A DNA stretch of 64,000 nt. Source: Vicugna vicugna. Its lineage: Eukaryota. The translations under genes were made by a program, and so were the position numbers. The notes beneath the pieces are model-generated. The model was not told the DNA's origin. It searched no databases and worked only from the letters and a program-made list of their open reading frames with translations. The stretch covers positions 6,412,489-6,476,488 of the forward strand of contig MU063897.1 in NCBI GenBank assembly GCA_013265495.1, in the 5' to 3' direction. This document shows positions 2,380 to 62,897 of this stretch, piece by piece (within the stretch, counting starts at the first letter, position 1; every line of letters begins with the position of its first letter).

Positions 2380-2700
2380 AGGCGGAGAGCAGCCGGCGGG
2401 CACCGGCTCCCACGCACGCATGCCGGGGACACACATGTTCACACACATGCACAGCAGGCAGTACCTGTCACGTCCTTCTTGGGAGACTCAGCCCAGCTGG
2501 AGAGCCACACTTCCGAGTCCCCCCCGAGAGCAAGCAGCAGCAGGAGAGAAGAGAAATCAGAGGAGGAGAGAGAACCGTTAGGCAGGCAGGAGGTCCACCG
2601 GCGAGTGGCTGCAGGCGCCGCGTTGGGCCGGCGGAAGGCGGGGGAGGGGAGGGGAGTGATTTCCTGGCCCTGGGACGGCTGCTGGGCGTGGGCCTGAGTG
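2380..2700. promoter_or_regulatory. Small CpG-rich patch around exon 7
   Basis: About 11 CpGs in 2590-2690 and a further cluster at 2380-2430, against a CpG-poor background. Confidence 0.4.
2465..2509 (-). CDS. SH3PXD2A: SH3PXD2A 45-bp symmetric exon: (V)WLSSWAESPKKDVT(G); exon 7
   Basis: Peptide is visible in ORF 2439..2819(-) and follows DYGSSKRKS in Tks5. Acceptor GGAAG after a long pyrimidine tract, donor CAG|GTACTG; phase 1 to 1. Confidence 0.93.
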
Positions 2701-21670: not shown

Positions 21671-22485
21671 GCCCTAAGTACAAGGGACCACCGCCACCCA
21701 ATTAACTGCGCCCCGCCCGCGTGCAGGCGTTTGCTTAGCCCCGCCTCCTCCACCCTGAGAGAATCCTGACCCCAGCCGACAGCGCCCAGAACACAGCATT
21801 GAGCACCCGAGGACTTGCCCTTCTGCTCCCTGTCTCCACCCCCTTAGCAAACTCAGGGTGCCCTGGCACTTGTCGGGCCAATGCCAGGGGGAGTCGGTGC
21901 CCTCCCATCCGGTCTCTGAGGGCAATCACGCAGAGCCCCCACCCCCGCAGCAAGAAGAGTTGGGGGAGGAGGGGAAGGTCTGCGCTGCAGGCGTTAAAAA
22001 CTCAAGTCACTCAAGCACGAACCCCCCTTTTCGGTCCTGGGTCTCACCTTCCCACGGGGAAAACCCTGCCTCTCTATTAACCCTTCCATCGCTGCCACAC
22101 CGCGGGAAGGATCCAGGGAGAAGTCACAGCGAGCCCAGCAGTGAGCCCTGCAGCCCCAGGGGGAAGATCCGACTGCCTAGGTCGCGGGGGCTTAGGCCCT
22201 TTACAAGACACCCCCACATTCCCCATGCACCCACCCTCATTCCCACGGAAGAGAGCCCGGGGAGAATCTGTGGGACGCGGTGGGAGGAGAAGGTGCGAGT
22301 AGCAGGGATCTGAGGGAGCATGAGCTGGGGAGGGGGGCAATTGAGGGGAGTACCCCGGCCCCGCAGGACCACTGGGCAGATGGGCGAGGACAAGCCCCCA
22401 GAAAGTCCTCTGCAGGGTCTGAGCGGCTCGTGCGCGAAGCGGGAGGAGAGGCTGGAGGGAAAAACGCCCGTGGGGGCTCCCTTAC

Positions 22486-22514
22486 CTGATTTCCTCTTGG
22501 AACTGCCATAGTCC
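22486..22514 (-). CDS. SH3PXD2A: SH3PXD2A 29-bp micro-exon: (E)DYGSSKRKS(V); exon 6
   Basis: GGACTATGGCAGTTCCAAGAGGAAATCAG flanked by TTCTTTTTCAG and GTAAGG. Phase 2 to 1 links the 47706 and 2509 exons in frame. Confidence 0.95.
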
Positions 22515-22543
22515 CTGAAAAAGAAGCAACAACAGACAGACAT
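22486..22543 (-). CDS. SH3PXD2A: Candidate alternative first coding segment (5'-extended exon 6): MSVCCCFFFRDYGSSKRKS
   Basis: ATG at 22543-22541 with A at -3, in frame with exon 6, directly downstream of a CpG island. No transcript evidence available. Confidence 0.45.
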
Positions 22544-22810
22544 GATTAGGGCCTGGCGGGTGCGCGGGGCTGCGGGGCTGCAGGGCTGCGGGGCTGCGGC
22601 AGCGGCGGCGGGGCGCCCACGGGCCGGATGCTCATGTGATTCTCGCGGCCGACAAGCGGCGCGCTCCGCAGCTGCACGCACTGCGCGCCTGCCCGCGGGT
22701 CCCCCGTCAGCCCGGCCTCCGGGCGCGATCCGCCCTCCTCGCCCGCCCCTCCCGCCCCGCCCTGCAGCCCGCTGCCCGCTGCCCGCCGCCGCGAGGGGCT
22801 AGGCGGGCTG
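22530..22810 (-). promoter_or_regulatory. Intragenic CpG island and GC-box cluster, probable internal SH3PXD2A promoter at the end of intron 5
   Basis: Very high GC and CpG density, several CCGCCC/GGGCGG boxes, TCATGTGA E-box at 22632-22639. PX-less Tks5 isoforms initiated in intron 5 are known in mouse and human. Confidence 0.75.
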
Positions 22811-23884
22811 CTGGTGCCCTTTCCCAGGCACCTTCCCTCTTTCTCAGCCGACAGAGGAGGGCGAGGCAGATTCCCATGCACTTTGTAAATAGGGAAACTG
22901 AGGCCTGGGCGGGTGGTCGCTAGGACTCAGGCCTTGCCCCGCGCTGGGAGCCTGTTCCCCATCCCTGAAGCGCTTCCCGTCCCAGTATCTTTGCATTGCC
23001 TGCTCCAGCCCACTAAGCCTTTAAAGTCATGACTGAAATGTCACCTCCTCAACGTGTCTTCCCCAACATCCTCCCCTTCTCCTTGTTGGCCTCTGAGTAA
23101 TTACAGATTTGTGTGACTCTTCGAAGGCTAGACCCAAGACTCCCTGAGGTCACACTGTGGCTCGTGTCTTCCCACTGTATTCCCTGGTCCTGGAATAGGT
23201 GATGATAGATAGGTGCTGTAGGTTGAATGTTGACCAGAAAGGCTCAGGCTGGGAACCTGGGGATTCAGTAGAGGTGAGGCAGAGCATACTGCCAGGAATG
23301 GTTGTTGAACTTCTAAGTGAGCACTAGGTTCAAATCCTGTCACTGATAGTAACTGCTGGGAGACCTCAGGCACTTAGCACTTTTACCTGCCCTGGGCTGC
23401 CCCAGCCTGGAGCCTCCCCTGCCCTCCAGCAAGGAATTAGCCCAGACTCAGCACCACAGTACTTCCCAAGGTCTGCCCCCACTGCCCTCCTGCCCTTGCT
23501 CCTGCCTTTGGCTCCTCCCAGGACCCCTTCATCCACCAACCCCCGAGTGGAGCCTCACATGCCTCTAAGATGCTCACGGTCTGTTAAGTGTTCAGGAGGG
23601 GCTGGTTGGGGTCCTATGTCTAGAAGAAATGCCTTTTGTCACCCTGGGATCAAGGAAAATGCCAATCTCAGGGCTTTGGTCAAAGCAAACTGTCCAGCTA
23701 GGCCTGCTGGCTGGAAAGAGGGGGGTCTCTTGGAGGAAAGGACAGCAGGTTCACAGGAAAAGGAGTCACCCTCATGGACACTCCCTGAGACTCCGATCCT
23801 GACAATCTGAGGGGTGGCCTGAGCTTTGGGGGCATTTGTTAAGCTCCAAGATGATTTGCCTCCACAGCCAAGGATGAGGGATCC

Positions 23885-47705: not shown

Positions 47706-47797
47706 TCTTTTGGGGGATTGACATCCTCTGGCCGGGCCTCAAAGAACCGGAAGACTTCATCACACTGTGAAATGTGGGGAGGCAGCCGGACAAGTGC
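47706..47797 (-). CDS. SH3PXD2A: SH3PXD2A coding exon, 92 bp, end of PX domain: ALVRLPPHISQCDEVFRFFEARPEDVNPPK(E); exon 5
   Basis: Peptide is visible in ORF 47702..47935(-) and is diagnostic of Tks5 rather than Tks4. Branch-like CCTAAT, pyrimidine tract and CAG acceptor; donor AGA|GTAAGT; phase 0 to 2. Confidence 0.97.
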
Positions 47798-62720: not shown

Positions 62721-62897
62721 NNNNNNNNNNNNNNNNNNNNNNNNNNNNNNNNNNNNNNNNNNNNNNNNNNNNNNNNNNNNNNNNNNNNNNNNNNNNNNNN
62801 NNNNNNNNNNNNNNNNNNNNNNNNNNNNNNNNNNNNNNNNNNNNNNNNNNNNNNNNNNNNNNNNNNNNNNNNNNNNNNNNNNNNNNNNNNNNNNNNN
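62721..62897. other. Assembly gap (177 N)
   Basis: Run of n. Confidence 0.99.

What the first reader, a model, noticed from the sequence alone, without database searches (positions are those of the whole stretch)
22486..22543. Internal-promoter N-terminus MSVCCCFFFR could replace the PX domain with a palmitoylation-type anchor
Seen: 29 nt upstream of the exon 6 start there is an ATG (A at -3) in frame with exon 6, giving MSVCCCFFFR-DYGSSKRKS, directly below a CpG island. Established: mouse and human make PX-less Tks5 isoforms (Tks5beta/Tks5short) from intron 5, and the PX domain is the phosphoinositide membrane anchor needed for invadopodia/podosomes. N-terminal Cys clusters followed by basic residues (e.g. 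GAP-43 MLCCMRR) are S-palmitoylated membrane anchors. Inference: this isoform may not be a passive PX deletion. It may swap a phosphoinositide-sensing anchor for a reversible lipid anchor (CCC + FFF + KRK) and send the five-SH3 scaffold to another membrane. Whether this peptide is already annotated in other species could not be checked here.
Basis: partly seen in the sequence, partly recalled or inferred. Interest (0 to 1): 0.85.

Follow-up and report, generated by a model that had tools for sequence, protein, structure and literature searches.

The report
Tks5-beta start peptide, possible lipid anchor
The ATG is the already published start codon of the PX-less Tks5-beta isoform of SH3PXD2A, but its ten-residue Cys/Phe peptide proves to be conserved as coding sequence from frogs to mammals and fits a known palmitoylation rule, making an untested lipid-anchor idea worth a bench test.

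Summary
On the minus strand an ATG at 22543 (A at -3) lies 29 nt upstream of the 29-nt exon 6 of SH3PXD2A. It is in frame, gives MSVCCCFFFR-DYGSSKRKS, and sits just below a small CpG island with four GC boxes.

This is not new. It is exon 6-beta, the start codon of Tks5-beta, described in 2014 (PMC4178035).

What that paper did not show is how deeply the peptide is conserved.
- MS[IV]CCC[FL][FY]FR occurs, with no indel, in 55 annotated or fragment proteins from placentals, marsupials, birds, reptiles and frogs. One teleost has MPLWCCFFFR.
- In seven DNA lineages, the eight beta-specific codons show 9 third-position changes, all synonymous. There are 2 first-position changes (V/I, F/L) and none at second positions (P about 0.002).
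- The adjacent 5'UTR shifts frame and length freely.

So the peptide is under protein-coding selection and is not merely a polypyrimidine tract.

Seven consecutive hydrophobic residues including three Cys, followed by basic residues, satisfy the experimentally defined GAP-43/PSD-95 N-terminal palmitoylation rule (PMC2156213). No paper in the searchable library links Tks5 to palmitoylation, and the delta-PX constructs used to mimic Tks5-beta lack this peptide. Acylation itself remains untested. Read-level RNA evidence could not be obtained.

The parts
22486..22543 (-). Exon 6-beta coding part (58 nt): the Tks5-beta start codon through the exon 6 donor. It encodes MSVCCCFFFR-DYGSSKRKS plus the first base of the next codon.
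   Evidence: sequence. (PMC4178035 gives a 58-bp exon 6-beta with a start codon 29 bp upstream of exon 6).
22515..22543 (-). Beta-specific 29 nt (ATG + 26). In alpha pre-mRNA it is the polypyrimidine tract and AG of the intron 5 acceptor. In beta mRNA it is codons 1-9 plus two bases of codon 10 (M S V C C C F F F R).
   Evidence: ungapped in 7 lineages, with 9 third-position, 2 first-position and 0 second-position changes; 56 proteins carry the core at the same length, and 55 have CCC.
22486..22514 (-). Constitutive exon 6 (29 nt) encoding (E/R)DYGSSKRKS. The KRK cluster lies 6-8 residues after the Cys/Phe stretch.
   Evidence: In one search all changes are synonymous, with the same third-position rate as the beta-specific codons.
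22544..22549 (-). CTAATC, a branch-point-like CTAA(C/T) motif directly 5' of the ATG. The Kozak -3 A is the likely branch adenosine.
   Evidence: CTAA is invariant at -6..-3 in 7 lineages; the in-frame residues before the Met are always L-T or L-I.
22546..22635 (-). Upstream ORF (29 codons), out of frame with the main ORF. Its stop ends at 22546, 2 nt before the main ATG. It is included only in transcripts that start upstream of 22635.
   Evidence: One search shows the frame and distance of this uATG vary among mammals.
22629..22640 (-). Conserved ATCACATGAGCA motif (E-box/M-box-like) that contains the uATG.
   Evidence: identical in mouse-like L005. (read as HMS or SHE in 21 mammalian fragments).
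22655..22688 (-). A 34-nt block nearly identical between the window and the mouse-like locus. It is the likely core promoter / transcription-start region.
   Evidence: The human EST 5' ends at -134/-119 from exon 6 map by position to about 22648/22633.
22730..22767 (-). Cluster of four GGGCGG (Sp1-type) GC boxes.
   Evidence: Partly conserved in L005. The paper mentions SP1 sites within -400.
22500..22850 (.). Small CpG island in the 3' end of intron 5.
   Evidence: GC 0.71-0.82, CpG o/e 0.78-1.05.
47706..47797 (-). Exon 5 (end of the PX domain, [31 protein letters not shown]). It is spliced to exon 6 in Tks5-alpha. Bounds are approximate.
2465..2509 (-). Alternatively spliced exon 7 (45 nt, VWLSSWAESPKKDVT). 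Intron 6 is about 20 kb.
   Evidence: Beta-type proteins occur with and without it.

Best explanation
The feature is the alternative first exon ('exon 6-beta') of SH3PXD2A. A small CpG-island promoter with GC boxes at the 3' end of intron 5 starts transcripts roughly 100-250 nt upstream of exon 6. With no upstream donor, the intron 5 acceptor is not used, so the last 29 intronic bases stay attached to exon 6. Translation starts at ATG 22543 and gives M-S-V-C-C-C-F-F-F-R fused to DYGSSKRKS and the five-SH3 scaffold without the PX domain. This is Tks5-beta, and up to here everything is published. The same 29 bases are dual-use DNA: they hold the branch point, polypyrimidine tract and AG for the alpha mRNA, and codons for the beta mRNA. 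Shown here: the codons are under protein-level purifying selection across tetrapods, and possibly since the teleost split. Inferred: the conserved stretch of seven hydrophobic residues with three cysteines, followed by R and KRK, is a GAP-43/PSD-95-type N-terminal S-acylation motif. After transient hydrophobic and electrostatic membrane sampling, zDHHC enzymes would acylate one to three Cys and tether Tks5-beta reversibly to a membrane, independently of PI(3,4)P2. Step confidences: identity as Tks5-beta start about 0.95; peptide under coding selection about 0.85; peptide is S-acylated about 0.45.
For: Identity:
- Sequence.
- PMC4178035 describes the same ATG, the 58-bp exon, ESTs, 5'RACE and a CpG island with SP1 sites. 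Its mouse primer reads MSICCCFFF.
- PX exons 4 and 5 and exon 7 are in the window.
- Homologues are SH3PXD2A.

Conservation:
- Beta-type N-termini are annotated in porcupine, fur seal, wild dog, bat, wallaby, monito del monte, 7 frogs, lizards, a turtle, birds and one teleost.
- A further 33 fragment ORFs read through the locus.
- All 56 have Met at the same place, no indel, and only V/I, F/L and F/Y swaps.

DNA from 7 lineages:
- Beta-specific codons 2-9 show 9 third-position changes (all synonymous), 2 first-position and 0 second-position changes.
- P = 0.0014 against equal rates, and P = 0.0017 against a pyrimidine-only null. A hand-computed, tree-free count of variable sites gives about 0.005.
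- The third-position rate equals that of exon 6 proper.
- Upstream of the ATG, frame and length vary freely.

Motif rule:
[quoted passage not shown] Hydrophobic swaps are tolerated, and a 6-residue N-terminal insertion is tolerated (PMC2156213).
- Tks5-beta has seven such residues.

Expression in this organism (indirect):
- RNA-run contigs hold 13-19 of 35 sampled words in 22545-22900, but only about 9-11 of the other 39 words of 22300-23000.
Against: - No acylation, fractionation or localisation data exist for the native peptide.
[quoted passage not shown] Those statements do not test other membranes.
- Tks5-beta mRNA is far less abundant than alpha mRNA, by over 400-fold in one tissue, and the protein is proteasome-labile. 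The peptide could therefore serve turnover instead.
- The DNA sample is small (7 lineages). Part of the conservation is certainly owed to the splice signals of a 29-nt exon.
- In about half of the mammalian fragments, and in sauropsid gene models, an upstream in-frame ATG could place the Cys cluster 24-40 residues from the N-terminus.
- Read-level evidence for transcript starts in this organism could not be obtained.
Confidence: 0.5

Rival explanations
1. The peptide is functional but acts as a turnover or quality-control element, not as a lipid anchor. An exposed, very hydrophobic Cys/Phe N-terminus (Ac-S-V-C-C-C-F-F-F after Met removal) serves as a degron that keeps Tks5-beta scarce and Src-responsive.
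For: Tks5-beta protein is stabilised by MG132, epoxomicin and bortezomib and is lost under high Src activity (PMC4178035). Its mRNA is much less abundant than alpha mRNA. The peptide is under coding selection, which this reading also explains.
Against: A hydrophobic degron does not require three invariant cysteines. F, L, I or V would serve, yet Cys never changes in the 55 tetrapod sequences, although two other hydrophobic positions do vary. The paper ties degradation to tyrosine phosphorylation, not to the N-terminus.
Confidence: 0.17
2. The conservation is owed to splicing and the peptide is incidental. A 29-nt exon needs an unusually well defined branch point, polypyrimidine tract and perhaps UGY-binding factors. 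Tks5-beta is then effectively a passive PX deletion whose first ten residues do not matter.
For: The ATG sits between an invariant CTAA(C/T) branch-point-like motif and the pyrimidine tract. All third-position changes are also pyrimidine-to-pyrimidine changes that a tract tolerates. Very short exons are known, from general knowledge, to have conserved flanking intron sequence.
Against: Pyrimidine swaps occur 9 times at third codon positions but only once at the 12 first- and second-position pyrimidine sites (P = 0.0017). The three G's, which weaken a pyrimidine tract, never change. The ATG has no splicing role yet is invariant in 56 sequences, 37 of which have ORFs that extend upstream, so the caller did not force the Met. 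There is not one indel in the tract. The one transversion seen (F to Y, TTT to TAT, in two frogs) damages the tract but keeps an aromatic residue.
Confidence: 0.13
3. The Cys triplet is a redox or metal sensor. Tks proteins organise NADPH-oxidase-dependent ROS production, and three adjacent thiols could be reversibly oxidised or could bind a metal to regulate the scaffold.
For: Tks5 promotes NOX-dependent ROS at invadopodia (cited in PMC4178035). The Cys are invariant.
Against: Adjacent cysteines are poor geometry for disulfides or tetrahedral metal sites, and no further ligands are nearby. The conserved hydrophobic and basic flanks are what a membrane-binding acylation motif needs, not what a redox switch needs. 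There is no direct evidence.
Confidence: 0.07

Closest known systems
Tks5-beta / exon 6-beta of SH3PXD2A (Cejudo-Martin et al. 2014, PLoS One, PMC4178035)
   Same: The locus, ATG position (29 bp upstream of exon 6), 58-bp first coding exon, intron 5 CpG island with SP1 sites and PX-less five-SH3 product are all the same. The mouse peptide MSICCCFFF differs from the window's by one conservative residue.
   Different: Nothing differs structurally; this is the orthologue. The paper compares only human and mouse and never mentions cysteines or lipidation. The tetrapod-wide conservation, the codon-periodic substitution pattern and the overlap with the branch point are added here.
GAP-43 (MLCCMRR...) and PSD-95 (MDCLCIVTTKK...) N-terminal dual-palmitoylation motifs (El-Husseini et al. 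2000, PMC2156213)
   Same: A short N-terminal stretch of at least five consecutive hydrophobic residues includes the cysteines and is followed by basic residues. There is no myristoylation glycine. It sits on a soluble multi-domain scaffold. The substitutions tolerated in evolution (V/I, F/L, F/Y) are the kind tolerated in the mutagenesis.
   Different: There are three adjacent Cys and an all-aromatic FFF flank instead of aliphatic residues. Position 2 is Ser, so Met removal and N-acetylation are likely. Acylation of Tks5-beta has never been shown. There is no sequence homology, only resemblance of motif.
Tks5short (Li et al. 2013, as summarised in PMC4178035)
   Same: It is another PX-less SH3PXD2A isoform from an internal promoter with a unique in-frame intronic N-terminus.
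   Different: It starts in intron 7, lacks exons 6-7, and lies outside this window (fragment family MDRGRPGRG...|GADTNAEP; scan note s1-219872). It has no N-terminal Cys cluster of the beta type.
Delta-PX-Tks5 constructs used as Tks5-beta mimics (e.g. BioID study PMC7176661)
   Same: They lack the PX domain and retain the five SH3 domains.
   Different: They are made by deleting PX from Tks5-alpha, so they do not carry MS[IV]CCCFFFR. If the peptide is an anchor or a degron, they do not model Tks5-beta.

Membership tests
Tks5-beta alternative first exon (exon 6-beta) of SH3PXD2A | The gene is SH3PXD2A: PX exons lie upstream, and exon 6 (DYGSSKRKS) and exon 7 lie downstream on the same strand. 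| tested here: met
   (exons 4, 5, 6 and 7 in the window). (hits named SH3 and PX domain-containing protein 2A).
Tks5-beta alternative first exon (exon 6-beta) of SH3PXD2A | An in-frame ATG lies 29 bp upstream of exon 6 and gives a 58-bp coding first exon. | tested here: met
   (ATG 22543, exon 6 from 22514, donor after 22486). One search gives the published definition.
Tks5-beta alternative first exon (exon 6-beta) of SH3PXD2A | A CpG island with SP1 sites lies within about 400 bp upstream. | tested here: met
   (island 22500-22850; four GGGCGG boxes at 22735-22762).
Tks5-beta alternative first exon (exon 6-beta) of SH3PXD2A | Transcripts start in intron 5 and run unspliced into exon 6 in this organism. 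| tested here: inconclusive
Word shares of RNA contigs fit coverage of about 22486-22750 and not the bulk of intron 6, which is rough and indirect. This is shown in mouse and human by the literature.
N-terminal hydrophobic Cys-cluster S-palmitoylation motif (GAP-43 / PSD-95 type) | Cysteines lie within the first ~10 residues of a cytosolic protein that has no signal peptide or TM segment. | tested here: met
   Cys4-6, conserved in 55 of 56 sequences, with two Cys in the teleost.
N-terminal hydrophobic Cys-cluster S-palmitoylation motif (GAP-43 / PSD-95 type) | At least five consecutive hydrophobic residues include the modified Cys (rule from PMC2156213). | tested here: met
   [VI]-C-C-C-[FL]-[FY]-F is seven residues. 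All observed substitutions keep it hydrophobic.
N-terminal hydrophobic Cys-cluster S-palmitoylation motif (GAP-43 / PSD-95 type) | Basic residues flank the motif and assist membrane sampling (supportive, not strictly required). | tested here: met
   R10, K16, R17 and K18 are invariant in tetrapods.
N-terminal hydrophobic Cys-cluster S-palmitoylation motif (GAP-43 / PSD-95 type) | Thioester-linked fatty acid on the Cys (hydroxylamine-sensitive, labelled by palmitate analogues). | not testable with these tools
No paper in the library links Tks5/SH3PXD2A to palmitoylation.
N-terminal hydrophobic Cys-cluster S-palmitoylation motif (GAP-43 / PSD-95 type) | Cys-dependent membrane targeting of the protein or of the isolated peptide. 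| not testable with these tools
   Published 'Tks5-beta' localisation work used delta-PX constructs without the peptide or antibodies that do not separate beta from short.
Myristoyl + palmitoyl N-terminal anchor (Src-family kinase / G-alpha type, MGC...) | Glycine at position 2 for N-myristoylation. | tested here: not met
   Position 2 is Ser in all tetrapod sequences and Pro in the teleost.
Signal peptide / transmembrane anchor | A hydrophobic segment long enough to span a bilayer (about 18-20 residues), or a signal-peptide core preceded by a positively charged N-region. | tested here: not met
   There are only seven hydrophobic residues, preceded by M-S with no positive charge and followed by the charged RDYGSSKRKS.

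The most novel reading that the evidence does not exclude
Tks5-beta is not a passive PX deletion. It would be an ancient, separately anchored form of the scaffold, conserved since at least the tetrapod ancestor. Its Cys-Cys-Cys/Phe-Phe-Phe N-terminus, encoded in the very bases that serve as the branch-point-to-AG segment of the alpha mRNA's intron 5, would be reversibly S-acylated. That would send the five-SH3 scaffold to a membrane chosen by zDHHC enzymes rather than by PI(3,4)P2. Delta-PX surrogates would then have mis-modelled it, and the alpha/beta ratio would switch the scaffold between two membrane addresses.
Probability: 0.4. Interest if true: 0.75.

Novelty: new member of a known kind. 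Interest (0 to 1): 0.55.

Why it matters
Tks5 is the core organiser of podosomes and invadopodia. The ratio of PX-containing to PX-less isoforms tracks with metastasis and prognosis. The field models the PX-less forms as cytosolic dominant negatives and mimics them with delta-PX constructs that lack the native ten residues.

If those residues are a conserved lipid anchor, or a conserved degron, two things follow:
- Those surrogates are wrong.
- The isoform switch changes where the scaffold acts, not only whether it acts.

The locus is also a clean example of dual-coding DNA. One 29-nt stretch is a 3' splice-site region for one mRNA and a selected coding sequence for another. That constrains how variants there should be read, because a 'deep intronic' change would be missense for Tks5-beta.

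Tried and rejected
No read-level starts, junctions or depth were obtained, and no workaround was tried.
- **The look-up of encoding contigs on annotated beta isoforms** found nothing, because only the longest product of each gene is on record. Beta-only gene models span more than 100 kb, so no DNA was returned.
- **Metagenome scan** with an exon 6-anchored degenerate pattern gave zero hits.
- **The search of protein representatives** returned mostly fragments. It was useful only for giving P0010 as a length reference.
- **The protein-atlas search** on residues 1-30 returned SH3 clusters with scores of 0.71 or less, so it was uninformative for the peptide.
- **Literature** searches for Tks5 or SH3PXD2A with palmitoyl/acyl terms found only unrelated co-mentions such as CPT1A and reference lists.
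- **Rejected: myristoyl-type anchor**, because there is no Gly2.
- **Rejected: signal peptide or TM anchor**, because there are only 7 hydrophobic residues.
- **Rejected: a longer N-terminus from the upstream ATG in the window**, because that ATG is out of frame and its ORF stops 2 nt before the main ATG.

Full report
**1. Observation**

Reading the minus strand gives ...cctaatc ATG TCT GTC TGT TGT TGC TTC TTT TTC AG|G GAC TAT GGC AGT TCC AAG AGG AAA TCA G|gtaag.
- The A of the ATG is at 22543 and -3 is an A.
- The acceptor AG is at 22516-22515 and exon 6 is 22514-22486 (29 nt).
- Upstream lies a small but genuine CpG island, about 22500-22850, with GC up to 0.82 and CpG o/e about 1. It has four GGGCGG boxes at 22735-22762.
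- The gene is SH3PXD2A (Tks5). Exon 4 ([26 protein letters not shown], about 55600), exon 5 ([31 protein letters not shown], about 47797-47706) and exon 7 (VWLSSWAESPKKDVT, 2509-2465) lie on the same strand. Homology searches return SH3 and PX domain-containing protein 2A.

**2. Already known**

Cejudo-Martin et al. 2014 (PMC4178035) describe this feature:
- It is a second SH3PXD2A promoter in intron 5.
- The paper cites human ESTs beginning 134 and 119 bp upstream of exon 6.
- It reports a mouse 5'RACE product.
- It defines a 58-bp 'exon 6-beta'.
- It notes a CpG island with SP1 sites within -400 bp.

Their beta-specific qPCR primer, TGTCTATCTGTTGTTGTTTCTTTTTC, reads (M)SICCCFFF.

One correction: Tks5short comes from intron 7, not intron 5. 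That promoter lies just outside this window (scan note s1-219872; fragment family seen).

The word 'cysteine' does not occur in the paper. Searches combining Tks5 or SH3PXD2A with palmitoyl/acyl terms found only unrelated co-mentions.

Later work treats Tks5-beta as a delta-PX protein that has lost membrane localisation. It mimics the isoform with PX-deleted Tks5-alpha, which lacks the native decapeptide.

**3. Is the peptide more than a pyrimidine tract read as codons?**

*Protein level*
- Using a porcupine beta-type model (P0115) as query for residues 1-40, I recovered annotated PX-less SH3PXD2A isoforms starting with the same peptide.
- MS[IV]CCCFFFR occurs in porcupine, fur seal, African wild dog, a bat, wallaby, monito del monte and five frogs.
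- MSICCCFYFR occurs in two frogs.
- MSICCCLFFR occurs in monitor, skink, gecko, anoles, softshell turtle, pheasant and a tinkerbird.
- MPLWCCFFFR occurs in one teleost.
- A second search for short fragments found 33 ORFs, called on short Logan/ENA contigs, that read straight through the locus into intron 6.
- Across all 56 sequences, the Met is present at the same position. In 37 of them the ORF extends further upstream, so the gene caller did not force the Met.
- The length from Met to Arg never varies. The only substitutions are V/I, F/L and F/Y.

*DNA level*
- I obtained the locus for six further lineages: one frog-like, two squamate-like, one galliform, one other sauropsid and one mouse-like.
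- In an ungapped alignment, Fitch parsimony over the eight beta-specific codons (positions 4-27) gives 9 changes at third positions, all synonymous. It gives 2 changes at first positions (V/I, F/L) and none at second positions.
- The probability of at least 9 of 11 changes at third positions is 0.0014 against equal rates.
- A null tailored to a pyrimidine tract counts only T/C swaps over the 20 pyrimidine sites. It gives P = 0.0017 for at least 9 of 10 at third positions.
- A tree-free count of variable sites (6 of 8 third positions against 2 of 16 others) gives about 0.005. I computed this hypergeometric figure by hand.
- The third-position rate (1.1 changes per site) equals that of exon 6 proper, where every change is synonymous.
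- The three G's of the Cys codons weaken a pyrimidine tract, yet they never change.

*Upstream of the ATG*
- The invariant CTAA(C/T) at -6..-2 looks like the branch point, which would make the Kozak -3 A the branch adenosine.
- Further upstream the constraint collapses. The window and the mouse-like locus differ by indels.
- A conserved TCACATGAGC motif is read in frame in 10 mammalian fragments and out of frame in 11. Its distance to the ATG ranges from 24 to 34 codons.

I conclude, with about 0.85 confidence, that the 27 nt are dual-use and that the decapeptide is under protein-level purifying selection across tetrapods.

**4. What the peptide most likely does**

The experimentally defined rule for N-terminal palmitoylation of PSD-95 (CLCIV) and GAP-43 (MLCCM) has these parts (PMC2156213):
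- Five consecutive hydrophobic residues that include the cysteines are required.
- Hydrophobic replacements preserve the modification, and hydrophilic ones abolish it.
- A six-residue insertion after the Met is tolerated.

Tks5-beta has seven such residues ([VI]CCC[FL][FY]F), followed by R10 and K16-R17-K18. The substitutions evolution allowed are exactly the hydrophobicity-preserving kind.
- There is no Gly2, so it is not a myristoyl-type anchor.
- Seven residues are too few for a transmembrane or signal segment.

S-acylation is therefore the best single explanation for three invariant cysteines in an otherwise unstructured N-terminus of a cytosolic scaffold. It remains an inference, and I put it at about 0.45.

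The rivals are:
- A hydrophobic degron. Tks5-beta is proteasome-labile, but a degron would not need invariant Cys.
- Pure splicing constraint. The codon periodicity, the invariant ATG and G's, and the absence of indels argue against it.
- A redox or metal role for the thiols.

**5. Expression in this organism**

I did not try to get round that.

The run index gives only a rough, indirect picture.
- RNA-seq contigs of runs X1-X3 hold 19 of 35 sampled words in 22545-22900, but only 9-11 of the remaining 39 words of 22300-23000. Runs X4 and X5 hold 13 and about 9-10.
- That is what a transcript covering about 22486 to about 22700-22750 would give: exon 6-beta plus a 150-200 nt leader, without most of intron 6.
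- It is not what even pre-mRNA or DNA coverage would give. It does not prove the splice to exon 7 or 8.

**6. Further anatomy**
- In the window an upstream ATG (22635, weak context) opens a 29-codon out-of-frame ORF that stops 2 nt before the main ATG.
- The human EST 5' ends reported in the paper would map by position to about 22648 and 22633 (my inference). Many transcripts probably exclude that ATG.
- A 34-nt block (22688-22655) and the GC boxes are conserved with the mouse-like locus.

**7. Verdict**

The feature itself is already known. It is cheap to test and remains unproven.

Noticed in passing
window 22629-22640 (minus strand) and 22546-22635: A conserved ATCACATGAGCA motif (E-box/M-box-like TCACATGA) contains an upstream ATG. 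In the window it opens a 29-codon out-of-frame uORF that ends 2 nt before the main ATG. Across mammalian fragments the same motif is in frame in 10 and out of frame in 11, at 24-34 codons' distance.
   Followed up: partly
window 22655-22688 (minus strand): The 34-nt block GCGCGCAGTGCGTGCAGCTGCGGAGCGCGCCGCT is nearly identical in the mouse-like locus L005. It is probably the core promoter / transcription-start region of the beta promoter.
   Followed up: partly
window 22544-22549 (minus strand); L001-L005 and L011 at -6..-1 of the ATG: A branch-point-like CTAA(C/T) is invariant in seven lineages directly 5' of the ATG, so the Kozak -3 A is probably the intron 5 branch adenosine. The start codon sits inside the branch-point-to-AG interval.
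   Followed up: partly
proteins P0203-P0207, P0213, P0317, P0321, P0322, P0325, P0331; loci L002-L004, L011: Sauropsid models and fragments carry a length-conserved (39-41 aa) in-frame extension, MPCGP..LFKG..PLSKWVGAWD..L[TI], before MSICCCLFFR. The 'WVG' corresponds to a GGGTGGG GT/GC-box-like DNA motif, which is also present in the frog-like L001. Whether this is coding or a promoter element is undecided.
   Followed up: no
proteins P0319-P0358 (outside the window, about 3 kb before its start according to scan note s1-219872): A large family of fragment ORFs, MDRGRPGRGAMAGRWLTACFLPSP|GADTNAEPMILEQ..., represents an in-frame intron 7 ORF running into exon 8. It is the Tks5short-type alternative N-terminus and is conserved among mammals.
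   Followed up: no
protein P0278 (Centroberyx affinis, SH3PXD2A-like isoform X4): A teleost PX-less model starts MPLWCCFFFRDCGGSGKRKS. It has two Cys and keeps the FFFR, which hints that the beta N-terminus predates the tetrapod-teleost split. This rests on a single predicted protein, and no DNA was obtained.
   Followed up: no
window 62721-62897: A run of 177 N (assembly gap or masked stretch), left untouched.
   Followed up: no
proteins P0010 (Fukomys damarensis) and P0260 (Vicugna pacos isoform X2): These annotated models have aberrant exon 6 regions (DRESSSSGSKTS and EDWGSFKKKS in place of EDYGSSKRKS). They are probably gene-model or assembly artefacts rather than real variants.
   Followed up: no
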